Both the position numbers and the translations under genes were made by a program. Shown piece by piece: positions 13,736 through 64,000 of a stretch of 64,000 nucleotides of DNA. The stretch is from Octopus sinensis. Lineage: Eukaryota. The notes under the pieces were generated by a model. The model made no database searches. It was not told where the DNA came from and worked only from the letters and a program-made list of their open reading frames with translations. The DNA is taken from the NCBI RefSeq assembly GCF_006345805.1, contig NC_042997.1, forward strand, positions 73,346,001-73,410,000, read 5' to 3'. Within the stretch, counting starts at the first letter, position 1. Every line of letters starts with the position of its first letter.

Positions 13736-13761
13736 CATACTTTATATATATATATATATAT

Positions 13762-13790
13762 ACAGACATCCATATAATCTACCTTTCACC

Positions 13791-13824
<34 letters not shown>

Positions 13825-13960
13825 CCTTTGCCAACAGAGATAGTAGTTCTCTGAGCTTCCTCCATCCTATTTTTTTTTCTAGAAACAAAACTTTCAGAGC
13901 ATTCACCACCGTTACTGATTTGATCACCTAAGTAGCAGAAACTCTCTACTACCTTATGAG
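13762..13960 (-). repeat. Local inverted duplicate of 13452-13631
   Basis: Reverse-complement match by eye, separated by ~130 bp containing a TA tract. Confidence 0.9.
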
Positions 13961-13961
13961 A

Positions 13962-14927
13962 GGAAGGATATTATCCATTTAATGAAAAGCTTCGGACTTA
14001 GTATAACTATAGATACTAGCCTAAAGGTTGTCAATTTCTTAGACGTTTCCTTAGATCTAAATAAGAACATTTATAAGCCTTATAGGAAGCCCAATGATAG
14101 ACTTCGTTATATTAATGTAGGTTCATGCCATCCCCCTATAGTATTCAAAACTTTAGTTAAAAATACTAGTAAGAGAATTTCTAGCCTCTCCTCCGATAAG
14201 GACATTTTTAATGGCGTTGACCCAGTATATAATAAGGCTTTAAAAGATAGTGGTTTTAGCGAAAAAATAAAATATACACCTGTTACTAACCCCAAAAGTA
14301 TAGATGAGGAAAAATAGAAATAGGAAGATCATCTGGTTTACACTCCCTTACTCACCCGAGGTGACCATCAATATAGGTAAATATTTCTTAGTACTGATAG
14401 ATAGATATTTTCCAGTTAACCATACTTATAGGAAGATATTCAATAAACAAAATTTAAAAGTTAGTTTTAGTTCAACTACCAATTTTAAAAATATAATCGC
14501 ACATAACACAGAAAAACCACAAGAAAACAGCTGTTCATGCAGGAATAAAAAATTGTGCCTGCTAAATGGAGCTTGCATGTCCGAGACCATCATATATGAA
14601 GCTACCGTGGACTCTATAACTACTAAAGACACCGTTTCGACGAAGAAATACGTGGGCCTTACAGAGGGTAATTTCAAGGCCAGGTTCAATAACCACACCT
14701 TGAGTTTTAGGCACTGGAACAAAATGGTAAGCGACAAAATTATCCAATCATATATGTCATTAAAAGATAAAGGTGTCAATTACAACATCCATTGGAAGAT
14801 TTTGGCCTAATGTAAGCCCTACACAAACGGCAGCGGAAGGTGCGGTCTATGCGACATGGAAAGATGGCTTATCTGGAAAAGTAGCTTAGACCCTACTACA
14901 TGTCTAAACTCAAGGACAGAACTTTTC
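13962..14927 (+). mobile_element. Penelope-like element (Naiad-like) fragment: RT thumb, Cys linker, GIY-YIG endonuclease
   Basis: VNFLDVSL, YRKPND..YINVGSCHPP, RKIIWFTLPYS, CSCRNKKLCLLNGAC, IIYEATV..KKYVGLTEGNFKARFNNH and CGLCDME..NSRTELF. Frameshifted and truncated. Confidence 0.85.
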
Positions 14928-14934
14928 GAATAAT

Positions 14935-17900
14935 TTTCTTTTTTTCGATGATTAAGTTAGGTTGTATAAATGTGCGTGGAATGGGGTCGAAATGGAAACA
15001 GGCTTGTTTTCGGGACGACCTCATTTCACATAGAATCGATGTAGCTGTTGTTACCGAGTCCAAGATGAAAGGACCCCAAGCGTTCTCACCACTTCTCAAT
15101 GGTTACGAGAAATTTATTTCTCCTAGCCGGGAGGGAGGTGCAGGCGTGGCAGTTCTTTTCAGGAAGAACTTGGACTTACAGGTAAGTACTGTCTTTCTGG
15201 ACCCAGAAGGTAGGCTGGTTGTCCTAGATGTGACGAACGTGAGTAAGCAGTCCTTCGGGTTGGTGGCTCCTAATTGACGTGGGCAGACCGGTTTGTTTCG
15301 GGAACTGGAGCACTTTCTAGTGACGTCCAAAACGGTAGTCTTGGTAGGGGATTTCAACACCATTCTCGATGCGCGGGTGGCTGGTGTAGGCTCGAGCGAT
15401 AGGAAGGGGAATCCTGGCCTCAAGGCTCTACTAGCGAGCTTTAATCTAGTAGACCGTTTTCGACTGGATGAGCCGAACGTTCCACAGTGGACGTGGAGTA
15501 ATAACGACGGCTCACGCAGATCGTACATAGATAGAGTATTTGTTAAGGAACGAGATAGGAATAGTGTTAGCTGTCCACAATCCTCTGTTGTGCCTTACAC
15601 GGATCACAAACTTGTGACGTGTGAGGTACAGGTAGATAAATGCCATAGACAAGGTCCCGGTACTGGAAAATGAACAAGTTTATTTTGACTTGTGAAGCTT
15701 TCCGTACCCGGATTAAGGAATTAGTACAGAGGGCATTATGTGGCACCATCATTAATAATAGATGGTGGCTCGCCCTCAAAAGAGCCATCCGTTTGGAGTC
15801 CATTAGATTTAGCAAGCAGCTAAGTTTAGATAGGACTAGAATAGAGGGCGAATTAGTTAAGAACTTAGACGAGGCTATGGAATCTGGCTGTGCATCCGGA
15901 GTGTTGGCAGCGAGAGCGGTATTGTACCGTCACCTCAACGCCAAGCGAGGGGTGTAGAGTCAGAGCTAAGTTACGTGCAGAAAACGAGAAGGTATTACGT
16001 TGCCGATGGGCCCGTCGTGAGGAGAGTCAGAAGGGCAAAAAGTCCTGTATTATGTCCTTAACTGACGAGCAGGACCGCAAGATCTATGGACAGGAGGAGA
16101 TGCAGAAGGTCCTTCACCAGCATTTCGCACGGCTGTTTGGGGGCGGTGGTCCGCTCGAGCGTGGGGAGACCTTAAAGGACTTCCAAGCTGGTGGGACTCG
16201 GCTCTCGGCAGGTGAGGCGGAGTGCTGTGAAGGATCGATCTCTCCCGCGGAGGTAAGAGGGGTTATGGCCGAGTGCGCCGGGGAAAAGTCGCCGGGGTTG
16301 GATGGTCTGCCCTATGAATTTTATTGTTGTATGCCGGACTTGTTCGGGGACATACTGGCAAGCGTCTATGCAAACTGGCAACAGAATGGGAGGATTCCCA
16401 GCTCTGTGAGTCGGGGAGTTGTGACGCTTGTCCAGAAAGACCCGAGCAAGGGGGACAGTATTAGTAATTATAGGCCATAACTCTACTTAATGTAGAGTTT
16501 AAGATTTTGGCCAAGGTTGACGGCTGTCGTGGAGAAACTTGTCGGGAAGGCATAGACATGTGCAATCCCAGGCAGGTCGATCCAGGATAATCTTCACCTT
16601 CTCCGCTACACTATAGATAGGGTCGGGAAATTAGACGGCAAAGGAGGGGCATTGGTCCATTTAGACCAAAGTAAAGCGTTCGATAGGGTAGACCATCGGT
16701 ACTTGGCGGCGGTCCTCGAAGCGGCTGGGCCCTGGCTTCTGCGGGTGTATCTCAGCTATGTACAGCGGCATCAAGTCCACAGTCCAGATAAACGGTTACC
16801 TAACGGAGCCGTTTTCGATCAAGCGTTCAATTCGTCAAGGGTGCCCCTTGTCCCCGCTTCTGAATGTTTTGGCTCTTGAGCCATTGCTGCGGAAGCTGGA
16901 GAAGTTGGGAGGCAACCCTAATGAAATCGGATGCGGTAAGTCTGTTTCTGCCCATGCGGATGACGTCACCCTCATCGTGTCCAACGGAACACAGCTACCT
17001 CGGGTGGCAGGTGCTCTCCATAGATACGAAGCGGTGGTAGGGGAAAAAGTTAACAGGGACAAGTCCAACGGTTTGCGCCTCGGCACCTGGAGGAACAAGC
17101 CGATACCGTCCAGTGTTGTTGGACACTGGACGGATGGTCTTGCTAAATTGCTCGGAGTCTGGTTTGGTCCAGACTCCCAGACGGAGAAGAATTGGAGCGA
17201 GGTAACGAGCAAGGTGGATGCCATAGTACGGAAGTGGTCCGGAAGGCATCTTTCCTTGAAAGGGAGGGCGGAGGTGGCACAGATGTTTATAGTCTCTGTC
17301 GTCACCTACCGCCTGACCGTCGTGCCTTGCCCCGATTCGTGGTTAAACAAGTTGGAACGACTCCTTTTCCGCTTTTTTGTGAAAGGAGGAAAGCCACTTG
17401 TGAGACGCCTCCGTGTGTTGCCAGGAACCGCTAAAGGGTGGACTGGGGATGCCTTGGCTAATGATGCGCAAGCATGCGTTGAGGCTGAGACACCTCTGGT
17501 GTTACCTGAAGGATAAGGTGTGGAGTTCGCTGGCAGAGGAATTCTTCTCGCGACCGGCCTCTATGGAGGGATTTACACCCGGTCTCATTAAAGGACGTAA
17601 CCTGACTTCATGGCAGAAGGACAGGCACTCTGGCTGATCCACAAGATGGGCAAGGCCGGCAGCGGGAATACCACCTCCGTGTTCTATAAAGGGCTGGTAG
17701 AGGGAAAAAATGACGACGTCCTAGGAAGGGCTCTGGGGTTCGATGAGGATCAACTCTCCAACCTGTTTAAGAAGACTTTCAGGTCGAGGTATTTGGATAA
17801 TTACCAAAAATCCCTGACCTGGCAGTGCTATAGGAATGCATTACCTGTTCGCGAGATGTTATCCAGGCACGGAATGTCAGTGCCACCGACGTGTCCAAGA

Positions 17901-18644
17901 TGTGGGTTGGACGATGAAACCGTTCAACACGCTTTTGTACAATGTCGGGAGCTGTCAGGCTTGATAAGTTACGTGGAACACGTGTTGTCGCATCTGGGAC
18001 GAGTACAGCTGTCGGCTGTATCTATAATTAAGATGATACCGCCAACTGGACTCTCAAAGGAAGGTAAGGCTTGTTTTTACTGTACGGTGGCAGTATTGAA
18101 AGAGTTTGTATGGAGAACTAGATTGGAAGGTCTAGTGAAAGGGTCCTTTATCTCTGGCCTCGGTTTGTTAAAATACTTCGGATATCATCTGAAGAGCAAG
18201 ATGGGGTTGGAGAAGAGGAGCCTGCCACAGAAAGAGTATATGGAACGTTGGAAGGATGTGATGAGAAAGGTGGGTGAGAGTAACCCAGCTTAATCATCGA
18301 GGAAAGGAAAATCAGCTGCTGGGATTTATAGACTGCCGGGTTCAAAATTGAAACTGGTGCCTCGCATTCCCTTTCACTGTACATAACTGTTTAAAATAAA
18401 GAAATAATAAAAAAAAAAGAAAACATACGCACTAAAAGTTCTCGTGATAAAGGCAAAAGTAAGCCAAGGTTTCGTTTCAAGGCAAAGTAAGCCAAGTTTT
18501 CCTACAAGTTACATAAAATTTTATTTTTGTAATTTTTATAATTTCATTCGAACTCGCATAGCATTTTTGTAATTGTTTTGTCCTGTAATGTCCCAATTCT
18601 ATGTTAGATCACTTGATCATAATAAAGATAAATCCAATCGAAAA
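14935..18644 (+). mobile_element. Tx1-clade LINE T2: full-span but disrupted ORF2 (APE-RT-CCHC) plus 3' UTR; no ORF1 upstream
   Basis: ATG at 14948 (MIKLGCINVRGMG). VGDFN, SYIDRVF and YTDHKLV (APE); KSPGLDGLPYEFY, HLDQSKAFDRVDH and HADD (RT); CPRCGLDDETVQHAFVQC. Stop at 18293, AATAAA at 18621. Several frameshifts. Confidence 0.95.
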
Positions 18645-20247
18645 TCGCTTTTTTTTTGGTGTCGGAATTTTTTATTGCGTTATTGGTGTGTCGAGGTTGT
18701 GAGTTCGAGTTCGTTGGTGGAGGCCGTTGAGGCGTGGTGAATGTTTTTGGAGATGTTTCGAAAATGCAAGCCCAGACGTATGCGGAAGCAGCAGACAGAG
18801 GCTTGACTGCGAGTGATTTAGAGCTGGAAGAAGTGGTAGTCGAGAAAGAGACATTGGAAAAATATTTCGACGGCTTGAAGTAGGAAGATGATTGTGTGAG
18901 AGTCACACCGTCTGAAGAAGAAGCAAAAGAAGCGGAGAAACGTATGATAACATACAGAACGTGGAGCGTGGCTTCAAAGAAAATAGAAGTGGCAGAGACG
19001 GAGGAAATAGAGAAATGTCTGCAAACGAGGAAGAAAATACGCTACAGTGGTCGTCCATTTTAAAAATGAAGATGAAGCAAGAAGGAATGTCACGAAAATT
19101 CTGAAATCTGAAAGATGGACATTATTACCAAGTTACTGCGGAAAGAGTGCAGTAAGAATAAGAATCGGTAGGATTTCGCCGGAGCTTAACATGGAAAGGA
19201 TTCTAGCGGCAGTGGTTTTCAACTGCAAGGAAAGCATTGAGGTGTTGAAGGTGGAAAGGTCAACAGAAGTAAAGTGGTGGGGTTATGCGGTGCAGGCATT
19301 GGTCCACATTACTATGCCAGACCTCTATAACATCCCGGAGGAGTTGGTGTTCCCCGACGAGACACGTCTTAGAGTCGTGGTGGAGGAGAGACCCCCAGTG
19401 TGTTACAAATGCAAAATAAGAGGCCACATGAAGGATGTGTGTCCGCTGGGAGAAGTGCAGGAGAAAACGATAGCACTGGAGGCTTTAACGAAGGAGTGGA
19501 AAGATACGTGTGTAGAGGAGGAAATCATCACTACAGATAATGTGGAAAGTGGTGAAGAGTTGGAGAAAGAAAATAGAAAGAGAACGCGGGTGAAATCACC
19601 ACCCAAAGAACAAAAAGAGGAAGAAAAAGCGAAAAACAAGATTACTGACGAGAGGGAAGACCGAACGTGCGAAGGGAGTGATGCAGAAGCAAAAGCAAGT
19701 GAACCAACAAAATTAACTGGAGAGGAAGAATGGGACAGAAGAATGGAAGAGCAGTTGAAAGGTCTATAAGAGAGGAGGAAGACCCAAAGGAAAGAAACAC
19801 AGAGTGGTAATATTATATTTCAAGGACAAAAATACGGAAAAGATGTTGGCAGGTAGGAAAAGTTTAATTAGAGTAAAGTTGAACCCAGAAATATATGATG
19901 ACCAGTGGAAGGCGGTAATCGTGGAGAGAGAGACATTGGAGAAAATGAGAGATGATTATAGTGTATGTGAATGATTATATGTACGTTATGACACTTTGCC
20001 AGCTATTGTGGATCAGGAGAGGTTGATAGAATACCTGACAGATGAACGACCAGTATAGCAGAACTGTGTTTTAATGAAGCTGCGAGTTATGGGGGGCTCG
20101 TAAGCCGTTCCATCTAATCCATTATAAATATTCATTTCACTTCATATTTTTCAATTTTTTTTATTATATGTACCCCATGTCCTGATTGTGATGTCCCCTC
20201 TTAATTCGGGCCTTAGTGCCTATAATAAAGATAAATCCAATCGAAAA
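18645..20247 (+). mobile_element. ORF1-only Tx1-derived retroelement (HAL1-like), element X
   Basis: ATG at 18764 (MQAQTYAEAA), RGRKYATVVVHF, knuckle CYKCKIRGHMKDVC at 19401-19442, Glu/Lys linker, no APE or RT. 3' UTR with hairpins and AATAAA at 20224. Confidence 0.85.
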
Positions 20248-20415
20248 CCGGTGATTACCGTACGTTGACGAGAGGCAAAAACCTCGAAACTATAGCCTGT
20301 ATGTATCACTTAGGTTTTCGAGAGGGGATGACCTCCCTTTGCGAATATTAGAAGGCACAGAAAATTTGTCTAAAGCCAGCTGGAGACGATGATCTCCTGG
20401 GGCTAAAAGCTTCAG
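20248..20415 (-). pseudogene. Second copy of the unidentified coding fragment seen at 1422-1600
   Basis: Minus peptide LLAPGDHRLQLALDKFSVP versus LVAPGEHLLQLAIDTLSVP. Confidence 0.55.
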
Positions 20416-21540: not shown

Positions 21541-21653
21541 ATTTATATATTTAGTCGATGACTATTTTCTCTTTTTCACCAGGCCGCTGGTTGCGATAAA
21601 TTTCTATTGAATTTTTTGCTACCCTAAATTGACTATATATATATATATATATA

Positions 21654-23270
21654 CAGTTGCGGTCAAAATGTTCAGAACGGCATTGTTTTTGTCAGAAAAG
21701 TAGGTATAAGTTTTTATTAAAGTTGTCTCTTCAGAGACAATAAATACAATATTAATTGGTATTGTCTGAGATTTTGGTGTAATTTGAGTGGATAATACAA
21801 AAGTTATGGATGATATAGTGATTTACTGCAAAAACTATGGTGGCCAAAATGATCAGAACGATTGAAAAAATAACAAAATAATCAAAAAGTGACGGAGAAT
21901 GCTGGAATTATTTCATATTTAGTGTGAAGCCCTTTAGCTTCAATCAAAGTTTGATATTTTCGACTGCATGGGGAAATGAAATTTTCATTTTCTTGCTGGG
22001 TGACCTTATTCCATTCTTCCTGAAGGGCATTCCATAATTGCTCGGTTGTTTTAGGATTTCTGGCTTTCAAACGTTCTCCTAGAATATTCCACACATTTTC
22101 AATAGGATTGAGGTCTGGGCTTTGAGCAGGCCAATCCATAACAATAACCTTTTCAGCCTTGAGGAAGTTCATGACCACCTTAGCCTTGTGACATGGGGCA
22201 TTGTCCTGCATGAATATAGGTGGTCGCTTAGTTGAATTTCTCAGCACAGGCAAAACGTGATCTTTTACATGTTGTTTATAAACTCCTGCATTTACCTTTC
22301 CATGTAATCGCAGCAAAGGGCCCACAGCATCTCCAGATATCATCCCCCAAACCATGACACTTCCTCCACCGAATTTAAATCTAGTCTTAAGGCATTTAGG
22401 TGACAATATTTTACCTGCTTTTCGACGAACGTACCTTTTCCCATCTGAGCCAAATAACATAGACTTAGATTCATCACTGAAATGCACCGTTTGCAATTTT
22501 TCTTGAGACCACAACACATGTCCGGTTGCAAAGGTAAGACGACACTTTTTATTCTTGGAGCTGATCAGTGGCTTCACTGCAGGTGCTCTTGCTTGTAGGT
22601 CATGTTCAACTAAAGGACAAGACACAGTTTTTCGAGATACAGTTTTCTTCAGTACAATGCTCATTTCCCAAAAAACAGCAGCAGCAGTTTTAAATCTGTC
22701 CTTTTTAACCAACTTTACCATAGCACGATCTTCTCTCTTGGTCGTTTTTCTTGGCCTACCTGTAGACTTTCTTGCTTCACACGAACCACAATCATCGTAG
22801 ACCTTAAGAATACCGTGAACAACACTTTTTGACTTGTTAACAATCTTTGCAATAGACCTAATACTTAAATTATCCTTCTTTCGAAGCTTAATAATCTGTT
22901 GACGAATTGGTAACGGAGTAAGTGGCATTATATTAACAAAGTACACTGCAAATATTCTTACTAATGTTTAGTAAACGAACTGTCACGTAAACAAATTCAA
23001 AACATTAGAGTTCGACGGTTAAATATACTAAAACATGGAGTAAAAGCAACCGTTCTGATCATTTTGGCCGCCATGGGTTTTGCAGTAAATCACTAAATCA
23101 TCCATAACTTTTGTATTATCCTCTCAAATTACACCAAAATCTCAGTCAATAACACATAATATCGTATTTATTGTCTGTGAAAATGATAGAATATAAAACA
23201 GCTTTGATAAAAACTTATACCTACTTTTCTGACGAAAACAATGCCGTTCTGAACATTTTGGCCGCAACTG
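21654..23270 (-). mobile_element. Tc1-family DNA transposon with IR/DR-type long TIRs
   Basis: Begins CAGTTGCGG and ends CCGCAACTG, with TA on both sides. TIRs ~21654-21860 and ~23051-23270 each carry outer and inner copies of CAAAATG(T/A)TCAGAACG. Confidence 0.97.
21882..22928 (-). CDS. Tc1 transposase (DD34E), 348 aa open frame
   Basis: N-terminal HTH and GRPRK motif. FSDESK, MQDNAPCH and WPAQSPDLNPIENVW, with 34 residues between the second D and E. ATG at 22928. Some non-consensus residues suggest decay. Confidence 0.9.
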   Translation of the reverse strand: MPLTPLPIRQQIIKLRKKDNLSIRSIAKIVNKSKSVVHGILKVYDDCGSCEARKSTGRPRKTTKREDRAMVKLVKKDRFKTAAAVFWEMSIVLKKTVSRKTVSCPLVEHDLQARAPAVKPLISSKNKKCRLTFATGHVLWSQEKLQTVHFSDESKSMLFGSDGKRYVRRKAGKILSPKCLKTRFKFGGGSVMVWGMISGDAVGPLLRLHGKVNAGVYKQHVKDHVLPVLRNSTKRPPIFMQDNAPCHKAKVVMNFLKAEKVIVMDWPAQSPDLNPIENVWNILGERLKARNPKTTEQLWNALQEEWNKVTQQENENFISPCSRKYQTLIEAKGLHTKYEIIPAFSVTF

Positions 23271-24165: not shown

Positions 24166-24238
24166 GCCGAAATAGCTCAGTTGGGAGAGCGTTAGACTGA
24201 AGATCTAAAGGTCCCTGGTTCAATCCCGGGTTTCGGCA
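24166..24238 (+). tRNA. trnF-GAA: tRNA-Phe (GAA)
   Basis: GCCGAAATAGCTCAGTTGGGAGAGCGTTAGACTGAAGATCTAAAGGTCCCTGGTTCAATCCCGGGTTTCGGCA. Full cloverleaf, anticodon at 24199-24201, canonical metazoan sequence. Confidence 0.98.
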
Positions 24239-51322: not shown

Positions 51323-52814
51323 TTGCCTATTCGCCTTTCAAAACATAGATTTCAAGTGAAATACATTCACTGGTTTCGAAAATAGAAATAAGACCCACCC
51401 CACCCCACCAAAAAGTCTAAACTAAGAGTATTAGTTTTTTTTTGTAAGAAAGCTAGCGAATGTGTACGGCAACAAAGACAAAAAACAGAGAACATGATAC
51501 ACAATTACAAATACAGCCAACAAAAAAATAACAACAGGTATCTTTGAACTGAGAACGAATCAAATTGAGCTGGCCTGTATGAAGTGAAATCCTAAAGGCA
51601 GAAACTCAGAAAATGGACATAAGAGGTGTTGGCGGTCGGCAGTCAGGCCAAGAAAGAAAGATCGTGGCTGGCCGAACACCGGTCACATGGAGAGAGGGCT
51701 AGGGGGAAGCAGGATTGAAGGATTAGAAAAAATCAAAGGGAAAAGTGCAGGGAAGATAAACGAGGGGGACAAGTGAGAGTTAGAGAATGAGAGGGCCAAA
51801 AAATGTGTGAGAGAGAGAGAGAGGGGGGAGCGAGAAAAAGAAAAGGGAAGAAAGTATGAGGGGGACTAAAAGATAGAGTAAGAGTTGTACAAAATTTAGA
51901 TACATACCTATATATAAACATACATAAATGTAAATGTTTTTCGCAAATAAATTGCGCATCATGCTTGAAGCTCCGATGAAGCTATAGTGTGATACACAAG
52001 CTCTCAACTGTGAGTGCGTTGCATCTTATAGCAGAAACAGCCGTAAGCTAATGAAGTTCATAACAGTTGTTTATTATCTTTGTCATCCCAGTTTCTAATT
52101 ACCGCTCTGTACTCGACTGATTCTTCGCATATGTCTATATTGGGAATCCTAAATGTTAAAATGTGTGTGTGTGAGAGAGAGAGTGGGGAGAGAAGCTTCA
52201 CACACTACTCAATATGCACCAGACCCTCTAGTTTATCATTTTCATAGAACTGTCTCCAGAAAATATTAAACTTACCCACATCAGTGTTTTTAATCTCAAA
52301 AGAGAACTAAAGAAAATGTTACCTTTTTTCTTTCTGTGTTTGGAGCCAACGTCTGTAGAGTAAGCTATGCGATGGAAGGTAATTTTGACTTTCATAATTT
52401 GCAAGCGTTTCCTTTTCTTCATCCGTATATATATGGGAGACGTCAGCTGGCTGGTAATCTCGGCCCTAAAAATAACACAGTCAGAACAGTAATTGATTGC
52501 ATACATTGCTACGCAACCACATAATTGTTAGGTAAGTGTATGGAAAATACATTTAACCGCAATAAATTTCAGGCACGTATTTTACCGATACGATAAACGA
52601 ATACTGTTGAATTTGAAACAGACCAATAAATAAATGAATGAAACTAAATACTGCAAATCTACCTTAAGTATATCGATTTTAACTGATGTAGTAACCGCCA
52701 ATACAAAATCACACTTTCATGAAAGGTGCATCGTATTTCGTATTCCATCATTAGTTTTGTATCAGTGTAATCCTCATTGTCGTTGTGAAATTCATAGTAT
52801 TGGTACTATATATA

Positions 52815-52848: not shown

Positions 52849-53340
52849 CTTTACATATATAAAACTGAGAATGTGTGTGTGTGTGTCTGTCTGTGTGTTT
52901 CCCTAAAACTTGAGAACTACACAACCAATTTCATTCAAATTTTACACATGCCTTGCTTAGGGTCCGGGGAGTGTCATCGGCAAACAAAATTTGAACTTTT
53001 TGCCTAGGGCGAGCCCACAGCAATATTATATCTTCTCCACTACGATTCCCTAAAACTCGAGAACTACACAACCAATTCCATTCAAATTTTACACATGCCG
53101 TACTTAGGGTCCATGTAGTTTCATGGGCAAAACAAATGTTCAACTTCTTGCCTAGAGCGAGCCCATAGCAATATCATATCTTCTCCACTATTTCAGTATT
53201 ACGTGATAAAAGTGAAACCAAAATATTTCTCTATTTTATGTCAGATACTTTCACTTTAACAATAAAAATAATAATAACAAATGAATTATATGTAGTAAGT
53301 AATAAAATCAAACTAAAGTATACTATAATCGTAATATAAC
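52848..53340 (+). mobile_element. Helitron-like repeat, 5' part with internal ~145 bp tandem duplication
   Basis: TC..TATATAAAACTGAGAATGTGTG 5' motif. CCCTAAAACT.GAGAACTACACAACCAATT unit at ~52901 and ~53048. Same family at 62872 and 63705. Confidence 0.7.
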
Positions 53341-53349: not shown

Positions 53350-53530
53350 AATAGCAATTGGTATAAAATTGCATCAATTATTTGAACTTGAAAAAGTGGT
53401 TTCACATGAATGGGAATAAATTAAAAATAAAATTAGCGTGCAGAAATGGAATAGTCCAGATGGATAATAAAAAATTAAATTAAAGAAAATACTATTGTCT
53501 ATAAAGTATACAATGTAGAGAAAAAAGGTC
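53350..53530 (+). pseudogene. 5' half of an older ORF1, split by the Y array
   Basis: ELEKVV (53384-53401) and ENTIVYKVYNVEKK (53485-53526) match the N-terminal motifs ELEEVV and IIYKTYDTTKK of other ORF1s in the window. Confidence 0.5.
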
Positions 53531-55213
53531 GCGTTTTTTTGCGCTCTGTAAAATTCGGTTAAAAAAGAAAAACAACAAAAAGTGAATTGTGGTTGCGGAA
53601 TTGGAACGTCGGTTGGTGCGGTTTCGCGTCGCACTGGTTCTGTGCGTCGCACGTTTTCTGTTCGGGAGGCCGTTTTTCGGTCGGAGGCGACTATGAGCCG
53701 CCTCTACCAAACGGATGAGATGTAAGGGAGAAATTTCTCTGAAAATTCGTCGACATCTGAGGAGGAGTTGGCGGTGAAAAAAATGGAAAGCACCTATGCA
53801 GGTATAACGAAGAAGTCAACAGAAAAAGAGTTAGACCTGGCTAAGTTGACGGACTTCCAGGAGTTCATGAAGGAGGAGGAGAACGGAGAGGTTGAGCTGT
53901 TGCCTCTAGCAGGGCGCGGAGACTGGTTCCATCGTAGAACCATTAAATATAAAGTATTTATGAATGGAGGTAGAAAAATGGAAGTGATTAACATGGAAGC
54001 AATTGAAGAGGCTTTCAAACGGACAGGAGAAGAAATTGTGTACATGGCAAAAGGATTAGAATATGGAACCATAACGGTACAATTTAAAAGTGAGAAAGCA
54101 GCCAGGAATATAGCAGCCAAGGTGGTGAGTACACAAAAGTTTTACTTGTTCCCCTCGTATTTGAATAGAAGGCCCACCAGAATTAGGGTGGAAGGAATAC
54201 CTCCACACCTAGAGGGCGAATTAATAACGGCTGCGGTTATCAAAGGAAATGAAGATAAAGTGGACATCCTCCACGCCATTATGAAATATGAAGGCGTGAG
54301 TGGTGCCACACTAGTAATGAACATACAGACGGAGGCGGAAGTTATAGAAAAGCTTACGGACAGTATAAAAACTGGAATATTATTATGAGAGTGTGGGTGG
54401 AGGGTAGGGCGCCCAGGTGCTACAAGTGTGGCATGAGGGGTCACATAAGAGCCTACTGCCCTCCACCACTAAAGGAAAAAGAAAAGGAAATCGTCGCGGA
54501 AGCCCCAAAAGAGGAAGAAACCAAAGAGAACCAAAGGGAAAAAGAAACGACAGAAGAAGAGGAGATGCAACAAGAGTGGGAAGAAGAAGAAAAAAGAGAA
54601 AAAGAAAGAAAAAGAAAAACTGTGCGAAGCCCCAACCCACCCCAACACCACCCGCACCCTCTGAATCCCACCCTTCCCCTGCAGACAGTGAACCCACCCG
54701 CTCCCCTCCAACAAGAAAACAAAAGAAAAATAACAATACAGACAGACAAGAGTTTGAAAACGAACCCAGGCCGAACATTTATATTGTGACTGAACAGAAA
54801 GAGGTTGAAAGGGTAATGGAGGAGTATGAATGGTATGAAATGGATGGGACCAGATATGCAGTGCTGGAAAAGAAGAATATAGATGAGTTTGTGTTGAGGT
54901 GTGAAAGGGAGAATTGGGAGGTGAAAGATACAAGAATGAGCGATGAATTCGTGGAATATATGGAGGACAGTTTCGGAGTAAGAATGGATATGGATGGTCT
55001 TCGTATTGGGAATGAACATTCAGGTGACAGTGAAAACAAAAGGACAGGTAAGTGATGCTGGCGGAGGGGGCCGTTAGCATCGCTTTCATATTATCCTTTT
55101 TTCATTTTCATTTGCTCATAAATTTTATCATATTGTTCTATGTCCCCCATGTTTTGTTATGTCCGCCATTCTTCGTAGCCCCTGGTGGGTAATAAAGAAA
55201 TAACATGGAGGAA
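53531..55213 (+). mobile_element. ORF1-only Tx1-derived element Y1
   Basis: MESTYAGIT, GLEYGTITVQF, knuckle CYKCGMRGHIRAYC at 54418-54459, stop at 55055. No APE or RT. AATAAA at 55191, then AACATGGAGGAAA. Confidence 0.87.
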
Positions 55214-57140
55214 ATCTATCCACATGTGTTGAGTTATTTTGTATGCGAAAATTGGAAAAAAACTGTTAAAAATTGTCAAAAAGTTGAGTCGCGCGAGGCG
55301 TTTGCCGCTGCGTGTTTGAACCTTTTATAGAAGGTGTGTCGACCCTCAAGTCATGGAGACTTACGCGGGGGTCGCCACAACAAAAAGTGACGAGTCTCTT
55401 AGAATAAAAGAAGTGTTCTTTAGAAAAGAACAATTGAAGGAATACGAGAAGTTCGTCAAAAGGGAGGGTGACAGCGTGAAGCTGGTCCCGCCTGTGGAAA
55501 CAATAGAAGAGAAAAATAACAAGACGATAACGTATAGAACGCAAGATAGAAACACGAGAAAACTGGTGAGAGTGACGATTGAAGAAATAGAGAAATGTCT
55601 GGGGGACATCATGAAAAAAGCGACTTTTGTAGACAGAGGAAAGAAATATGGTACGGTGGAGGTGAGATGCGCAACAAAGGAAGTGGCCGCCTCATTGGCT
55701 TCCACTGTCCTGAAAGCGGAAAATTTCACCATGTGGCCGACGTATAAAGGAAGACGAGGGGTACGGGTAAGAGTCCCAAAGGTGCCCCCAGATATTAAAA
55801 CAGAAATGCTGGTAACAGCCATTATTGGGGCAGCAAAAGAGGAAGTAGAAATAGGGTCAATTAAGGAGACGAACGTTGTAAATTGGAAGGGATTCGGAGT
55901 AGAGTTGTGGCTGATGGCCACAATGGAAGACATCGAAAGATTTCCTTCCAAATAGAAATAGAAAACGAGAAAACAATTAGTGTAATAGTGGAAGGCAGAA
56001 AACCGAATTGCTACCTGTGCGGATCAAGAGGGCACATAAAAAAGGAATGTCCGATGTATGAATTCACAGCGGAGCAAAAAGAGACACAAAGTGGAGAGAA
56101 GGAAAACGAACACGAAGGAAAGAACAGCGAAAACAAGGAAAAGGAAATAACGGAGAAACAACAAGAGAAGGGAAGTAACAACGCACTGAAGGAAAATGAA
56201 AACAAAGGGAAGAAGATAGTAGAAAAGGAGCAAAATTCACAGGGTGCAGAAGTAGTGGAGAAGGAGCCAAGGCAGAAGCAAGAGAAAGAAAAGGAAAGTA
56301 CATTAAAGGAAAGAGAAAAAGCAGGAAAAGAACAAGAGAAGGAACAGAACCAAGAGAAAGGAAAAGATGGTATGCAAAAAGGAAAAGAAACAACAGGAAA
56401 GGAACTTAAGGCACAGGGTAGAGAGACGGCAGACAAAGAGCCAAAAAGACAAGAGAAGGAAAAAGAAAGAAGAGAAAGCAAAAAGAGAGAAAGAGAGAAA
56501 CCGAGGGAGGAGAAAGAAGAGGAAGTAAGTCCTAAGAGAAAAACTAGAGAAAACGTAGGTACGAATAGAAAATTCAAATACTATGGAACGTTGATCCATC
56601 ACAGGCACTGTGAGGAGATGGAAGATTTAATAAACGTAACAAACGGATATACGTGGGTCAGGATGGGCACCGAATGGAAAGAAACAGGTGCACTCGTCCA
56701 CGAGAACGACGCCGAGGCGTTCATCGAGGCAGCTGGCAAGAACGTGTCAAAACATATGAAATGCCGACTTACAAGGTGGCCTCGAACGATGGAAGTTACT
56801 CAGATTTGGTAGACATAATGGAGTATATATAAAAGAAAAGGTATTGTGAAAACTTTAATTTGGAAATGATAAAAAGAACTTTAAATTCTGAAAAAAAAAA
56901 AAAGAAATGTTGAACTTTGTAAAACTTTTGAAATGTATGTTGAAAATGTATAAAATGTTTTATTTGGAAAATATTGTTGACGAATAAAAAACAAATGACG
57001 AAATGTAACCGCTCGATTTCGGGGATCGAGTGGGCATTACACCACATTGTACAAACTTCATAATTCATTATTCATTTTCCCGATTGTATTGTCCCATCTA
57101 TGTAGCCCCTCGTGGGTAATAATAAAACAACATGGAGGAA
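55214..57140 (+). mobile_element. ORF1-only Tx1-derived element Y2
   Basis: ATG at 55353 (METYAGVAT), RGKKYGTVEVRC, knuckle CYLCGSRGHIKKEC at 56009-56050, long E/K linker, stop at 56812, one frameshift near 55950. AATAAA at 57121, then ACAACATGGAGGAAA. Confidence 0.88.
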
Positions 57141-60100
57141 ATCAATTTTTTGCGTTATTAGTAAGTTGATATATTTTTGCTCTCGTACTATTATCTCTGT
57201 TATTATATACTGTTGGTCTACCTGTTTTGTCTATTGTCGTCTAACTGACGAAGTAAGCCTTCGCGCGAAGACTTCGCGTTGGTGTTCCCCCCTCCGTGGG
57301 GGAAAACTACAATTAATTTGGATTTACCAAAGGCTTGTTAAAGCCATTTGTTCAAGATGGAGTCCCCCATCTCTTATTCGCCCGTGACGAGAGAGGATGA
57401 ATACCCGGCGTTGTCGCCAAGAAAAAAAGAGGCGTTGTCGCCAAGAAAAAAAGAGGCGTTGTCGCCGAAGAAAAAAGAGGCGGCGTCGCCCAAGAAAATG
57501 GAAAAACCAGTACCAGCATCAACTCCACCAAAAAAATTCGCTGAAGTGGCTGGGAAAAAGATCAAAAAAATAAATATAGAAAATTTTTTGAAAATTTGCA
57601 GACTGTGTAAAAAAAGAAGGCACAGAAGTGACTGTGGCCACAAACATACAAAAACATGACGATATAGAAAAAAAAAAGAATAATATATAAAACTTACGAC
57701 ACAACGAAAAAAATGATCCAAAAAATCGAAGAAAAAAAAATAGAGTTTTGTCTAAAACCTTTTATGGATAAAATAACGTATATAAACAGAGGAAAAAGAT
57801 ACGGCACAGTGGAGGTGCGTTTTACTACGGAGGAGATAGCGAAGAAACTATCGATGGAGCCGATCAAAGCGGAAAACATTGTCTTCCTTATAAAGGAAAA
57901 AGGACGTCGAAAATTTCAATGAACAACATACCGCCAGAGGCAGATGCTGAATGTCTGGTGGCAGCAGTGATGGTAGGTCTGGAGGAAAAAATAAACATCC
58001 TCCAGGCCACAGTGGAGGAAGAGGAGTTTTGGAAAGGGCAGAAAATAGTGATAGCCATTCAGGCGGAGGTGCAAACACTGGAAGAAATTCCAGAAACGGT
58101 AAAGATTAGTGAAGACGAGAAAATAACAGTTTTCGTGGAGGGCAGGAAGCCGAGGTGCTTCGGCTGCGGCAAGAAGGGTCATGTAAGGGCGGAATGCCAA
58201 CCCCAACCCAAACCGCAGGAAGCACCTAAGCCAAAAGAAAAAGAAGATAATGTGTCACCAGAAGCAGCGTCGGACGGCCCAGAAGGGAAGACTGAAGGTG
58301 TGGAGGTGACGGTGACAGCAGAACCAGCGGCGGAGGAAAAAAAGAGCGAGGAAAAGATAAATGAGGAGGGGTGGGCAAAAATGACCGGAAAAAAAAAGAA
58401 AAACGGAAACCACCCCACCCAGAGTAATTTTAAAAAAGAAAAAAGAGTCAATGAACTCGTATATGGCCGTAAAGGCAGCAAATAGCAGACTCGGAAACGT
58501 GTTGGCAGCCATGGCCAAAGTGGAGAAAGTAGTGAAAAAAAACGACTTTGTAATTTACAGAATAGGCCGGAAGGATTACGGGCGGATAAAGTCAGAATTC
58601 TTCCATGACGTAGGCCCACTTAGATTGGATGTGACATCTCCACATATATTCGAGGGCCTACGTCAGACTCCCCAACGAGGCCCAGAAAAAGAGTTAGAAG
58701 AACAAGAGAAAACCGAACCACTGATATAAGGTAAGTAATGGATTACATTTATGTTAGTTGTTTGAATGTGCGCGGCCTGGGAGCAGGCTGGAAGCAAGGT
58801 CGCTTCCTGCATGATATCAGGTCGCGTAATTTAGATGTTATTGTTGCTACAGAAACCCGGTTAGAGGGGCCAAGAGGTCTACTCCCGCTGTTTGACGGCT
58901 ACGAGAGTTTTTTCTCTCCTGGCAGTCCTACAGGCGGGAGTGGGGAGTTGGTCCTATTAAAAAGAAACCGGGTTTCTGAGAAAAAGTTAATTTTTGCAGA
59001 TCCAGAAGGTAGGCTGGTCGTCATGGATTTGACGTTCAGTAATGGTAAAGTTATCAGACTGGTTGCAATTTACGCACCCAACCATACAGGGCAAAGTGAT
59101 TATTTTCGTGAACTAGAAAACTTTCTTGGTACTTCGCATTCATTAGTGGTGCTAGGAGACTTTAACACAATTTGCAAAGCGGATGTAGATTGTGTTGGCT
59201 CGCGTCCAGATAGAAAAGGCAACAGTGGCTTCATGGAACTGCTAAGCCGCTTTGAGCTAGCAGATCCTTATAGGCTGGAATTTCCGAACGCTCCATTGTG
59301 GACATGGTCAAACAGCGACGGATCTTCCAGGTCATATTTAGATAGAATACTAATTAGAAAAGTAGACAGTAAAATAGCTAAGTGTCCACAGTTTTACCCG
59401 ATCAGCTACAGTGATCATAAAATGGTCACTTGTAAGCTTGACATAGATAAGGTTAAAAATAGAGGATCCGGTTACTGGAAACTTAATACGTCCCTTTTGG
59501 CGATTAAGGAGTACAAAGACCGGATTAGGAATATAATTCAGAGGGCACTATCTGGTACCATCATTAATAACAAATGGTGGTACGCCCTCAAACGAGCCAT
59601 CAAGTTTGAGTCTATTAGATATAGCATAGGAGTAGTGGCTAGAGAGGCTAGAAGGGAAACTACTCTAGTTAAGGAATTAGAGGAAGCCATGAAAACTGGC
59701 TCTGCGGCTCAGGTGGCGTCCAAGAGACTGGTGTTAAACCAGCACCTCGAGGCCAAACACATGGGCTGCATTGTCAGGGCTAGAATCCGCCATATGGGAT
59801 GTGAAGGAATCAACGCCGTGAGATGGGCCCGAGTGGTGGAAGCTCAGCATGGTAACGATGCCACGATTCGATCTTTGACGAACCAACAAGGTGAGTTGAT
59901 AAACGAACCCGAGGAGATGTGTGAGGCCTTTCAGGAGCACTTCGCTCAGCTTTTCGGTGAGTGCGGCGGACTGGATAGGAGGAGGGCCTTTACGGACCTA
60001 CTCGACGGGCTGCCGCGCTTATCGGGGCGAGATGCGGAGGGCTGTGAAGGGCCAATCACGCCTCAGGAGGTGGTTGAGGCAATGGCGGACTGCGGCGCGG

Positions 60101-62380
60101 GCAAGGCGCCGGGTCTGGATGGTCTACCCTATGAGTTATATAAGAGTATGCCAGACTTGTTCGGGCACCTACTGGCGGAGGTCTATGCGAACTGGCAGCA
60201 GAACGGGCTTATACCCAGATCTGTGCGCCGGGGAGTAGTGACTCTCGTCAGAAAGGACCCGAGCAAGGGGGAGTGCATTGATAATTTCAGGCCCATCACT
60301 CTGCTAAACACAGAGTTGAAGATTTTGGCCAAAGTGTTATCGAAAAGATTGGCGCGTGTCGCGGATGGTCTGATCGGAGAGGCACAGACATGTGCCGTTC
60401 CGGGCAGATCCATTCAGGATAATCTCCATCTAATGCGGTACACTATAGAGGGGTTTAATAGTGATTCTGGCAAGGGTGGGGCACTGGTCCATTTAGACCA
60501 ATCTAAAGCTTTTGATAGGGTCGACCATCGTTACCTGGTATCTGCCCTGGCACAGTTCGGGCTGAGCCTTGGCTTCCTCAGGTGGATTATCCAAATTTAT
60601 GATAACATCGACTCGGTAGTTCGGGTGAACGGCTTCTTGTCGAAGCCGTTCAAAATCAAACGCTCGGTCCGTCAAGGGTGTCCGCTCTCCCCGCTTTTGT
60701 ACGTGATGGCTCTTGAGCCATTACTGCGAAAACTGAGCGGCATCCCGAGACAGCCAGGTAATGGAAAATCAGTGTCAGCGTACGCGGATGACATCACCAT
60801 CATCGTAACCGAAATGTACCACCTATGTAAAGTAGGCAAGGCCATAGAGGTTTACGAGACGGTGACAGGAGCAAAAGTTAATCGCGAAAAGTCAGTCGGC
60901 TTGCAACTCGGCACCTGGAGAGGCAAGTCGATGCCTCCTGACAGCGTCGTGGGACGTTGGACGGAGGGTCCGATTAAACTGCTAGGGGTCTGGTTCGGTC
61001 CAGACCTCCAAATAGAGAAGAATTGGGGCGAGGTAACGAGCAAGGTGGCTGCAGTAGCCAAGACCTGGTCTTGGCGGTGGCTATCCCTGAAAGGAGGGCG
61101 GAGGTGGCCAATGTGTTTATCGCATCGGTTATCACCTACCGCCTTTCCGTCGTTCCTTGCCCTGATTCGTGGTTGATCAAGTTGGAAAGACAGCTCTTCT
61201 ACTTCTTGTGGAAGGGCGGGAAACCACTTGTGAAACGCTCTACTTGCTGTCAACAACCGTTAAAGGGTGGGCTAGGGATGCCTTGGCTGATGATGCGCAG
61301 ACATGCGCTGAGGTTAAGACATCTGTGGCTCTACCTGGATGGTGAACGGGTGTGGTCTTCGCTAGCAAAACTGATGTTTCCCAAGTTCACTAGTTTCGGT
61401 GGATGGGAAACCTGGCTGAATCGTAGATCGAAACTTGGTACTTGGTACACGGAGTGTCGCAAGGCTCTCCTGCTATTCCGTCGCTCGGGCAACGCCTGCG
61501 GTGGGGGTTCCACCACATTCTTCTATAGAGGGTTGGTAGAGGCGGAATGTGAAGATACCTTGGGGGAAACCCTAGGTCTCGACGATAATCAGCTGGCCAG
61601 TCTGTTCCGACGTACGTTCGAGCCGAGGACACTGGACAACTTCCAGAAGTCTCTGGCATGGCAATGCTACAGAGGAGCTCTACCTGTTCGGGATAAACTC
61701 GCAAGGCACGGTGGCCAAGACAGTCCGATATGTCCAAGATGCGGGCGGGATAGGGAAACCGTCCCGCACGCTATTGTTCATTGTCCGGACGTGTCTGAGG
61801 TGTGGGTTTATGCCGAACACCTGTTGTCAGGTACACGAAGAGTACAGCTGTCGACTGAGTCGATTACAAAAATTGACCCACCGGATTTCCTCGTGAATGA
61901 AGGTAAGTTTCGTTTTCTCGTTGTAGTAGCAATTGCGAAAGAGGTGATATGGAAGACGAGAATGAAAGGTTTACAGTCAGGCAAGTTCATCTCCGGCCCT
62001 GGTTTGATGAAGTATTTCATCTTTCACCTGAAAAGGAAGATAGGGCTGGAGAGAATATGCCTGACTAGGAGAGTGTATGAAGAACGATGGAAGGATGTAG
62101 CACGAAAGTTGCGAGTGAAAGATACAACATAAATGTAATACCAAGCGCAACCAAAAGTATCAGTGGGGAGGCGGGGCTCGTGGGGTCCGAGCTAAACCCG
62201 CACCCACTCCACCCGTAATGTCTTCCGGTCTGTCCCATCATTCGATTTCTGTCCATTTATTGTAATTCATGAAAATTTTTAAATCCGATTTATTGTAAAA
62301 ACCCATTCGTTTGTCTGACCCCATCATCAGATTGTATTGTCCCATCTATGTTCGCCCCTTGTGGGTAATAATAAAACAAC
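57141..62380 (+). mobile_element. Full-length Tx1-clade LINE Y3 (ORF1 + ORF2 + 3' UTR)
   Basis: ORF1 ~57357-58729 (frameshifts at A runs; knuckle CFGCGKKGHVRAEC at 58156-58197), ORF2 58738-62132, AATAAA at 62370. Confidence 0.95.
58738..62132 (+). pseudogene. Tx1 ORF2 (APE-RT-CCHC), intact except for one 1-bp deletion near 61090
   Basis: CLNVRGL, ATETR, GDFN, SYLDRIL, YSDHKMV, LDQSKAFDRVDH, RQGCPLSP, YADDI (60781-60795) and CPRCGRDRETVPHAIVHC (61731-61784). CTGAAAGGAGGG here versus TTGAAAGGGAGGG in T2 marks the missing G. Confidence 0.93.
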
Positions 62381-62690
62381 ATGGAGGAAAGCACCTTCGG
62401 AAAGTGTCTTGGTGCGACTATGATAGGTATCTAATCAGAGGCGGTAAATTCGCCACAATAGAAGCAAGGTTCGAGTCAACGAAGCGTGCAAGGGAGTACT
62501 CGACTCGAACTTGTAAAGTGGAAATATATTATTTTTACCTTTATATCTGGGACGTAGGACGTTCTGGAAAAAATTTTAAATGCCCCCCCACTCCACCCCG
62601 AAGTAGAGGTAGGCTGGATTGTAGCCACACTTCTATACAAGAGGGATGACAAGATACAATTGATCGAAATTACAAGAGACGGGCTAACAA
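62381..62690 (+). pseudogene. 3' continuation of the older ORF1 split by the Y array
   Basis: MEESTFGKCLG, RGGKFATIEARF (62437-62472) and PEVEVGWIVATLLYKRDDKIQLIEIT align to the other ORF1s. Confidence 0.7.
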
Positions 62691-62841
62691 TTCCAGTCTG
62701 TTATATATTTTGAGTATTGTTATCATTAGCGATATCAAGATATAACTTTGTATTTTGTATTTTATGTGTATATGTATATATATAGATGTACATGTAATAT
62801 GTACACATATATATACACATATATACATGCACTAGCACTAT

Positions 62842-62871: not shown

Positions 62872-63100
62872 TATATGTATATAACTGAGAATGTGTGTCT
62901 GTCTGTCTGTCTGTCTGTCTGTGTGTTTCCCTAAAACTTGAGAACTACACAACCAATTTCATTCAAATTTTACACATGCCTTACTTAAGGTCCAGGGAGT
63001 GTCATCGTGTGGGATGTGCTAGAAACATCAGCAAAATCTCCCTTAAATCACTACCCATTTTGTCTGAAAAAATTTCAAGGTTTTTATTTTTACTGAAAAG
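62872..63100 (+). mobile_element. Helitron-like repeat, 5' part, directly after the preceding 3' terminus
   Basis: Same AACTGAGAATGTGTGTCTGTC...CCCTAAAACTTGAGAACTACAC motif as 52860. Confidence 0.7.
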
Positions 63101-63639: not shown

Positions 63640-63713
<74 letters not shown>

Positions 63714-63723
63714 TGAGAATGTG

Positions 63724-63754
<31 letters not shown>

Positions 63755-64000
63755 TTCCCTAAAACTTGAGAACTACACAACCAATTTCATTCAAATTTTA
63801 CACATGCTTTACTTAAGGTCCAGGGTGTGTCATCAGCAAAAATAATTTAACTTTTTCCCTAGGGCGAGCCCACAGCAATATCATATCTTCTTCACTATTT
63901 CAGTATTACGTGTTAAAAGTGAAACAAAAACATCTCTCTATTGTAATGCAGACACTTTAATACTCAAACTATTAAAGTGAAAGTATTATATAACAGTGAT
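63640..64000 (+). mobile_element. Helitron-like repeat, 5' part (runs off the window)
   Basis: Matches 52860-53260. Confidence 0.7.

What the first reader, a model, noticed from the sequence alone, without database searches (positions are those of the whole stretch)
53350..62690. The Y array sits inside the ORF1 of an older relative: retroelements targeting their own kin
Seen: Y1, Y2 and Y3 are each followed by AACATGGAGGAAA (55202, 57129, 62378). After Y3 this reads on as MEESTFGKCLG...RGGKFATIEARF. Left of Y1 lies ENTIVYKVYNVEKK. Joined, they align with IIYKTYDTTKKMIQKIEEKKIEFCL...RGKRYGTVEVRF of Y3 ORF1. Inference: three different elements inserted successively at one site within an ORF1 coding region, so the endonuclease targets ORF1 of related elements (safe haven or competition). 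The left flank lacks an exact copy of the motif (AATGTAGAGAAAA differs by four transitions).
Basis: partly seen in the sequence, partly recalled or inferred. Interest (0 to 1): 0.85.

Follow-up and report, generated by a model that had tools for sequence, protein, structure and literature searches.

The report
Retrotransposon array inside a relative's ORF1
Three different LINE-type retrotransposons sit head to tail at one point inside the decayed first gene of an older, related LINE; this looks like the site-specific targeting of other mobile elements already known for this kind of LINE, but only one target site could be examined.

Summary
Y1 (53527-55201), Y2 (55215-57128) and Y3 (57142-62377) are three distinct full-length units, each followed by an exact AACATGGAGGAAA. 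The right flank (to about 62700) is clearly a decayed ORF1 of the same superfamily: profile scores 21.4 + 11.7 bits, 0 of 300 shuffles. The left flank is probably the upstream part of that ORF1 (6.2 bits, 40 of 2000 shuffles, in the right place and order).

The 13-mer corresponds to ORF1 codons (N-M-E-E) at the homologous site; Y1's own ORF1 has 11 of 13 bases there. ORF2 is APE + RT + zf-RVT and ORF1 has a CCHC knuckle, so this is an L1/Tx1-group LINE, probably from a cephalopod.

A sister lineage in the window (X) and a relative in Argonauta (Z) each carry their own tail. X abuts one repeat at two separate places; both Z copies abut (TATC)n. Site-specific arrays therefore look usual for this group.

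There is one independent Y target. I could not tell whether the right-hand 13-mer is host or element sequence. No other Y copy could be retrieved.

Tx1-clade LINEs that target DNA transposons and LTR elements, and tandem copies around a target duplication, are already published. This is a new variant of a known kind.

The parts
53375..53526 (+). Left part of the host: decayed N-terminal region of an ORF1 (QLFELEKVV ... ENTIVYKVYNVEKK), GC about 22%.
   Evidence: ORF1 N-terminal profile scores 6.2 bits at the end of the flank (profile positions 50-67 of 73). Reached by 40/2000 shuffles and 0/160 natural AT-rich windows. A colinear weak match QLFELEKVV to Y2 QLKEYEKFV.
53512..53524 (+). AATGTAGAGAAAA, a 9/13 copy of the tail (four transitions), 2 nt from the Y1 junction. 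It is either the host's own version of the target or a chance match.
   Evidence: matches with 4 or fewer mismatches occur at about 1% of positions in ORF1 N-terminal DNA. Transitions-only matches occur at about 1e-4 per position in the window.
53527..55201 (+). Y1: full-length ORF1-only unit. It has two extra G, then 5' end TCGCG-T7-GCGC, ORF1 53783-55055 with two frameshifts, and no ORF2.
   Evidence: The 5' end resembles those of Y3 and X-c.
55178..55190 (+). Y1 3' hairpin GCCC-CTGGT-GGGT, directly before AATAAAG.
55202..55214 (+). 13-nt tail AACATGGAGGAAA after Y1.
55215..57128 (+). Y2: full-length ORF1-only unit. ORF1 55353-56812 has one frameshift near 55940 and a CCHC knuckle. No ORF2.
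   Evidence: zf-CCHC E 1.4e-5.
57105..57117 (+). Y2 3' hairpin GCCC-CTCGT-GGGT.
57129..57141 (+). 13-nt tail after Y2.
57142..62377 (+). Y3: unit with both ORFs. ORF1 57357-58730 has at least three frameshifts. ORF2 58738-62132 has one frameshift near 61095-61104.
58738..62132 (+). Y3 ORF2: apurinic-type endonuclease, reverse transcriptase and a C-terminal zinc-binding domain.
   Evidence: Pfam: Exo_endo_phos 6.2e-11, RVT_1 1.7e-31, zf-RVT 2.6e-9.
62354..62366 (+). Y3 3' hairpin GCCC-CTTGT-GGGT.
   Evidence: In one search the minimum-energy fold of this 44-nt stretch was a different structure, so the hairpin here rests on the pattern scan.
62378..62390 (+). 13-nt tail after Y3. It reads N-M-E-E in frame with the right flank. 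Host-derived or element-derived: unresolved.
62391..62700 (+). Right part of the host: decayed central ORF1 region (STFGKCLG..RGGKFATIEARF..PPLHPEVEVGWIVATLL..), with two frameshifts and stops. It breaks off before the zinc knuckle.
   Evidence: tblastn E 7e-7 to 4e-5 against a very small database. Profile 21.4 + 11.7 bits, 0/300 shuffles. Multiple alignment.

Best explanation
**What it is.** A fragment of an old, decayed ORF1 from an L1/Tx1-group LINE ('host') was hit by a site-specific LINE lineage (Y). The hit lies at the codons N-(M/V)-E-(E/K), just upstream of the best-conserved central block of ORF1.

**The three units.** Three different full-length RNAs were reverse-transcribed there head to tail. 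They share one 3' module: a small hairpin, AAUAAA, then the 13-nt tail AACAUGGAGGAAA.
- Y3 carries the endonuclease and reverse transcriptase.
- Y1 and Y2 are ORF1-only units that presumably borrow that enzyme through the shared 3' module.

**Why an array forms.** The tail has the same sequence as the ORF1 target codons. After the first insertion, tail plus right flank re-create a perfect site, so the same spot is hit again.

**Shown here.**
- The anatomy of the three units and their tails.
- ORF1 homology of both flanks.
- The correspondence between the tail and ORF1 codons.
- Site-specificity of lineage X, and (TATC)n after both Z copies.

**Inferred.**
- That the Y endonuclease recognises this sequence.
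- Target-primed reverse transcription as the mechanism.
- Trans-mobilisation of Y1 and Y2.
- The order of insertion.

**Two sub-models remain open.**
- (a) The right-hand 13-mer is host DNA, and a short stretch was lost at the Y1 5' junction.
- (b) The host's own copy is the 9/13 AATGTAGAGAAAA on the left, and every Y unit brought its own tail.
For: - Three exact 13-mers end a shared 3' module.
- The units differ deeply in ORF1 (29-33% identity) yet share the 3' end.
- Each unit starts at a family-typical 5' end, so they come from full-length transcripts.
- The right flank is ORF1: 21.4 + 11.7 bits, 0/300 shuffles.
- The left flank is ORF1-like at the right place and in order: 40/2000 shuffles, 0/160 natural windows.
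- The joined flanks align along the whole ORF1 family alignment.
- The 13-mer matches the homologous codons of other ORF1s. Y1 has 11/13 at 53990, one of only eight non-tail near-matches in 128 kb.
- ORF2 is APE + RT + zf-RVT.
- Lineage X ends with its own tail against the same repeat at two separate places.
- Argonauta Z copies end in (TATC)n twice.
- The hairpin shows compensatory changes between lineages.
- Tx1-clade LINEs that target other transposons, and tandem copies around a target duplication, are published (PMC4494074).
Against: - There is only one independent Y target site.
- The left flank has no exact 13-mer. A plain target-duplication model does not fit without an extra deletion.
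- The left-flank homology is modest (p about 0.02 before position is counted).
- The host is only about 0.5 kb (152 + 310 bp), truncated on the right.
- All three Y units carry frameshifts, so no active copy was seen.
- Endonuclease specificity was not tested.
- The clade was not established by phylogeny.
Confidence: 0.55

Rival explanations
1. Off-target hit. The Y lineage's usual target is some other repeat that carries AACATGGAGGAAA. This locus is a rare insertion into a look-alike site (AATGTAGAGAAAA, 9/13) that happens to lie in an ORF1. The 13-mers are simply the elements' own tails.
For: - Only the degenerate copy is present on the left.
- With one site, the rule cannot be seen.
- Sister lineages target non-LINE sequences.
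Against: - Sites with 4 or fewer mismatches are common: 3.4 per kb. Such loose recognition would not give site-specific arrays.
- The tail matches the homologous ORF1 codons of several families, and Y1 at 11/13. An unrelated target would not predict this.
- Tail plus flank reads in frame as ORF1.
Confidence: 0.22
2. No insertion into ORF1. The right flank is a 5'-truncated older member of the same array, and the left flank is unrelated AT-rich DNA whose ORF1 likeness is chance.
For: - The left-flank score is weak.
- 5' truncation is common in LINEs (established knowledge).
- A weak 3'-module-like string, ATGGATAATAAAAAA, lies at 53460.
Against: - The left match sits exactly at the junction, at the expected profile position and in order. 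No natural AT-rich window reaches its score.
- The truncation point would have to coincide with codons that the tail imitates.
- A strict hairpin + TAATAAA scan finds only known modules (six of the seven; Y1 is outside its geometry), not 53460.
- The right flank has no 3' module of its own.
Confidence: 0.08
3. One event, not three. A single reverse-transcription run jumped from the 5' end of one RNA to the 3' end of the next (Y3, then Y2, then Y1), laying down the whole array at once in the ORF1 site.
For: - The interior junctions are exact tail-to-5'-end joins with no extra bases.
- Interior tails are explained without any target duplication.
- End-to-end template jumping is an established property of LINE reverse transcriptases (from my own knowledge; R2).
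Against: - Arrays with different partners occur at other sites (X-b/X-c, W1/W2). Sequential reuse of a regenerated site explains these equally well.
- Nothing here separates the two.
Confidence: 0.15

Closest known systems
Tx1-clade target-specific LINEs: Tx1L into the piggyBac-type Tx1D; Tx1-Mar into Mariner-N4_AMi; Tx1-9_AMi into Harbinger; Tx1-8_Crp and Tx1-4_AMi into LTR retrotransposons (PMC4494074)
   Same: An APE-type LINE that inserts at one position of another mobile element. Different sub-lineages have different targets, including microsatellites, as with Argonauta Z and (TATC)n here.
   Different: The target here is the ORF1 coding region of a related LINE. That source does not list this target class. 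Clade membership of Y was not tested by phylogeny, and only one site was seen.
Tandem SINEU-3 insertions 'sandwiching a TSD' in crocodilians (PMC4494074)
   Same: Head-to-tail copies at one specific site with a constant short sequence (16 bp there, 13 bp here) between them, read there as sequential insertions.
   Different: Here the units are three different ORF1-bearing elements. The outer left copy of the short sequence is not exact, so a simple duplication is not demonstrated.
Drosophila telomeric HeT-A / TART / TAHRE arrays (PMC13534243, PMC5537684)
   Same: Head-to-tail mixed arrays of LINEs in which a Gag/ORF1-only element coexists with partners that encode reverse transcriptase.
   Different: Those elements add to chromosome ends and belong to the Jockey clade. 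Here the array is internal, at a defined sequence, and the elements are of the L1/Tx1 type.
HAL1 'half-L1' elements of mammals (from my own knowledge, not checked here)
   Same: Non-autonomous LINE derivatives that keep ORF1 and lack ORF2.
   Different: The Y1 and Y2 ORF1s are as far from Y3's as from other lineages, and only the 3' module is shared.

Membership tests
APE-type non-LTR retrotransposon, L1/Tx1 group | ORF2 with an N-terminal apurinic-type endonuclease followed by reverse transcriptase. | tested here: met
   Pfam: Exo_endo_phos 6.2e-11 and RVT_1 1.7e-31 on 58738-61095.
APE-type non-LTR retrotransposon, L1/Tx1 group | C-terminal cysteine/histidine zinc-binding motif in ORF2. | tested here: met
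   zf-RVT 2.6e-9 on 61104-62129.
APE-type non-LTR retrotransposon, L1/Tx1 group | ORF1 with an RNA-binding (RRM-type) domain and a CCHC knuckle. | tested here: inconclusive
   zf-CCHC is met in Y2 (1.4e-5), and the CxxC..H..C motif is seen in Y1 and Y3. The RRM fold is not shown: no Pfam hit, the AlphaFold model has mean pLDDT 49, and Foldseek found nothing.
Tx1 clade (in the strict sense) | The reverse-transcriptase domain groups with Tx1 references in a phylogeny. | not testable with these tools
   No labelled reference sequences were available. The nearest named hits are unannotated cephalopod and plant LINE proteins.
Target-specific LINE | Independent copies lie at the same position of the same target sequence. 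| tested here: inconclusive
   Y has one independent site holding three units. X meets the criterion at n=2. Both Z copies end in (TATC)n, but their downstream flanks are nearly identical, so they may share one duplication. No further Y loci were found.
Target-specific LINE | A target-site duplication of fixed sequence flanks each copy. | tested here: not met
   The left copy is AATGTAGAGAAAA, 9/13. The interior and right copies are exact.
ORF1-only non-autonomous LINE partner (HAL1- or HeT-A-like) | ORF1 is present, ORF2 is absent, and the 3' end is shared with an autonomous element. | tested here: met
   Y1 and Y2 give no ORF2 hit. Their 3' module and tail are shared with Y3.

The most novel reading that the evidence does not exclude
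The Y lineage is a LINE that lives on other LINEs. Its endonuclease homes to a conserved codon block at the start of the conserved central block of ORF1 in sibling families. The element carries a copy of that block as its own 3' tail. ORF1-only satellites with the same tail ride along, so kin ORF1s become landing pads that fill with mixed arrays.
Probability: 0.35. Interest if true: 0.7.

Novelty: new variant of a known kind. Interest (0 to 1): 0.5.

Why it matters
If it holds genome-wide, it would extend the known target range of site-specific LINEs to the coding sequence of their own relatives. That would bear on competition between transposon families, and on how LINE-rich cephalopod genomes build nested arrays. 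It would also give a compact, testable case of an endonuclease whose target is mirrored in the element's own 3' tail. As it stands, it is one well-documented locus.

Tried and rejected
**Searches for more Y copies (all empty)**
- Exact look-up of the 812-aa Y3 ORF found nothing.
- A metagenome scan with the 3' end pattern gave 0 hits.
- A metagenome scan with ORF2 C-terminal protein patterns gave 0 confirmed hits.
- A protein search with Y2 ORF1 gave 0 hits.
- The best ORF2 relative (59% identity, L003) sits on a 3.1-kb contig that ends before the 3' end.

**Ideas tested and dropped**
- The one-mismatch motif at 23032 lies inside a Tc1/mariner element, so it is chance.
- I suspected a hammerhead ribozyme or a small RNA gene in the X target. 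Rfam gave nothing at the gathering threshold or at E up to 1.
- The minus-strand ORF1 at 50991 seemed to begin at the target codon. It is an intact unit of another lineage, W, and is not interrupted.
- The left flank might have been part of the flanking S repeat. That repeat ends at about 53251.
- The left flank might have been a decayed Y-type 3' module (ATGGATAATAAAAAA at 53460). It has only a 3-bp stem, lies 37 nt from the 13-mer-like string, and is not found by the strict scan.
- I looked for a programmed frameshift in Y1 and Y2 ORF1. No slippery heptamer is visible, so I treat the shifts as mutations.
- RRM fold by AlphaFold and Foldseek: the model confidence was too low and there were no matches.
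- Reading frame as a test between sub-models (a) and (b): both readings can be made in frame, so it is not informative.
Full report
**Setting.** The window is eukaryotic and rich in repeats, with microsatellites, a Tc1/mariner element and a Penelope-like fragment. The best named relative of the Y3 ORF2 is a protein of the octopod Argonauta hians at 49% identity, and the best hit overall is 59%. The source is therefore probably a cephalopod whose own sequences are not in the searchable collections.

**Anatomy of the array.** Exact AACATGGAGGAAA occurs at 55202, 57129 and 62378. Each copy ends a shared 3' module: a 4-bp hairpin (GCCC/GGGT), AATAAA, a few bases, then the 13-mer (the hairpin is the predicted minimum-energy fold for Y1 and Y2 but not Y3).

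The three units are:
- **Y1, 53527-55201.** 5' UTR, ORF1 with two frameshifts, 3' UTR. No ORF2.
- **Y2, 55215-57128.** The same layout, with one frameshift. No ORF2.
- **Y3, 57142-62377.** ORF1 with at least three frameshifts, and ORF2 with one.

ORF2 has Exo_endo_phos, RVT_1 and zf-RVT domains, and ORF1 has a CCHC knuckle. The three ORF1s are only 29-33% identical to each other. That is as far apart as they are from other lineages in the window. Their last 60 nt, in contrast, are nearly the same.

Y2 and Y3 start TC(T/A)AT directly after the preceding tail. Y1 starts TCGCG-T7-GCGC after two extra G, like X-c, which starts TCGC-T9-GG. All three are therefore full-length copies of different RNAs that share one 3' module. 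This is the pattern expected if Y1 and Y2 use the Y3-type enzyme. That last point is an inference.

**The flanks.** The right flank, 62391 to about 62700, is a decayed ORF1.
- A profile of seven ORF1s scores 21.4 bits in one frame and 11.7 bits in another, in order. The best of 300 shuffles scored 5.9.
- It aligns from the E-E-x-x-K-C-L-G block, through RG-x-x-Y/F-[GA]-T, to the PP-x-x-x-E block. It stops before the zinc knuckle.

The left flank is much weaker.
- It scores 6.2 bits, reached by 40 of 2000 shuffles and by none of 160 natural AT-rich windows.
- The match (ENTIVYKVYNVEKK against T-I-x-Y-[KR]-[TV]-[YF]) lies at the very end of the flank, at profile positions 50-67 of 73.
- A second weak match (QLFELEKVV) lies upstream in the right order.

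I take the left flank as probably the same ORF1. About 10% remains for chance. The host carries several stops and shifts within about 100 codons, so it is older than the Y units.

**What the 13-mer is.** Read in the frame of the right flank, the 13-mer gives N-M-E-E. In the family alignment this falls on the conserved hydrophobic-E-E position. The homologous DNA of the other ORF1s resembles the 13-mer:

| ORF1 | Sequence at the homologous site | Matches to the 13-mer |
|---|---|---|
| Y1 | AACATGGAAGCAA | 11/13 |
| Y3 | AAAATCGAAGAAA | 10/13 |
| X-c | GAGACGGAGGAAA | 10/13 |
| Y2 | ACGATTGAAGAAA | 9/13 |

The Y1 site is one of only eight non-tail matches with 2 or fewer mismatches in 128 kb of both strands. 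The tail is therefore an ORF1-like sequence from exactly this position. That would be an odd coincidence if the usual Y target were unrelated to ORF1.

**Two sub-models.**

(a) The right 13-mer is host DNA.
- The joined host lacks only about 3 residues relative to the family.
- The interior tails then need a target duplication, and the expected left copy must have been deleted at the Y1 5' junction.
- The 9/13 transitions-only string at 53512 would be a coincidence. Matches that loose occur at about 1% of positions in such DNA, and transitions-only ones at about 1e-4.

(b) The nick lay to the right of the host's own diverged copy, AATGTAGAGAAAA, and each unit brought its own tail.
- This explains every 13-mer without an extra deletion.
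- It leaves the host about 9 residues short at that point.
- It also leaves two A and two G unexplained at the junction.

A plain target duplication cannot give unequal left and right copies, because both would come from host DNA. I cannot decide between (a) and (b) from one locus. In both, the target is this ORF1 codon block.

**Relatives behave the same way.**
- **Lineage X** (ORF2 about 50% identical to Y3) has units at 1-1429, 14948-18644 and 18645-20247. The last is ORF1-only and lies head to tail with the second. X units end hairpin + TAATAAAG + ATAAATCCAATCGAAAA. At two separate places they abut the same unknown repeat at the same point, and those flanks are 72-81% identical.
- **Lineage W** forms an ORF1-only pair on the minus strand with the tail GAATCAAGCTACCAA.
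- **Lineage Z**, in Argonauta, ends hairpin + TAATAAAGAAA and runs into (TATC)n twice.

The hairpin changes by paired substitutions between lineages: GCCC/GGGU, GAUC/GAUC, AGGC/GCCU, GCC/GGC. A strict scan for this hairpin before TAATAAA finds six of the seven known modules and nothing else; Y1 falls outside the scan's geometry. Lineage-specific tails, fixed targets and arrays are therefore normal for this group. This raises the odds that the Y flank is a true target.

**Comparison with what is known.**
- Tx1-clade LINEs are known to target piggyBac, mariner and Harbinger DNA transposons, LTR retrotransposons, microsatellites and small RNA genes.
- Tandem copies 'sandwiching a TSD' at such sites have been described and read as sequential insertions (PMC4494074).
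- Mixed head-to-tail arrays with ORF1-only members recall the Drosophila telomeric elements (PMC13534243).
- What would be new is the target class: the ORF1 of a related LINE, mirrored in the element's own tail.
- Strict Tx1 membership was not tested, because no labelled references were available.

**Limits.**
- One independent Y target.
- No intact Y copy.
- No genome-wide data.
- The RRM fold of ORF1 was not shown.

**Verdict.** This is a new variant of a known kind, of moderate interest.

Noticed in passing
window 53527-57128; 18645-20247; 51318-48400 (minus strand): Five of the eight units of this LINE group in the window (Y1, Y2, X-c, W1, W2) have a 5' UTR, ORF1 and 3' UTR but no ORF2. 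Their ORF1s are very divergent, while the 3' module matches that of an ORF2-bearing partner where one is present (none for W). This looks like a guild of ORF1-only riders.
   Followed up: partly
window 1409, 18620, 20223, 55190, 57120, 62369, 49641 (minus); L001 12770 and 18840: A conserved small hairpin with compensatory base changes lies directly before TAATAAA(G). It is followed by a lineage-specific tail of 13-18 nt, with no poly(A). This is likely the recognition module for the reverse transcriptase.
   Followed up: partly
window 1430-1603 and 20248-20414: The two right flanks of lineage X are diverged copies (72-81% identical) of one unknown repeat, entered at the same point. It has no Rfam match, and a hammerhead-like look was not confirmed.
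   Followed up: partly
window 58730-58737 (Y3), about 55048 (Y1), about 50030 (W1, minus strand): GGTAAGT, a perfect 5' splice-site-like heptamer, sits at the end of ORF1 in several lineages. In Y3 it lies between the ORF1 stop and the ORF2 ATG. Its meaning is unknown.
   Followed up: no
window about 54385 (Y1) and about 55940 (Y2): Y1 and Y2 both need a shift into the same relative frame about 10 codons before the zinc knuckle, while Y3 is in frame there. No slippery site is visible. This is probably coincidence but is unexplained.
   Followed up: partly
window 52852-53251, 62872-63007, 63700-63958: A SINE-like repeat, preceded by (TA)n and (CTGT)n runs, brackets the host-plus-array region on both sides in the same orientation.
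   Followed up: partly
window 13960-14930: The 3' part of a Penelope-like element (an ORF that looks by eye like a GIY-YIG nuclease, 14304-14810; Pfam found no domain in it) abuts the start of X-b ORF2 at 14948. X-b therefore lacks its ORF1 and 5' UTR.
   Followed up: no
L001 (Argonauta hians) 9690-18900: Two related elements end in (TATC)n of different lengths, followed by about 170 bp of nearly identical flank. Upstream of the second lies a (CATC)n run. This is consistent with a microsatellite-targeting lineage.
   Followed up: partly
window 21650-23270; 24166-24238; 52325-52470 (minus strand): A Tc1/mariner element with a 354-aa open frame, a tRNA gene (69.8 bits), and what looks like a host exon with splice-site-like borders.
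   Followed up: no
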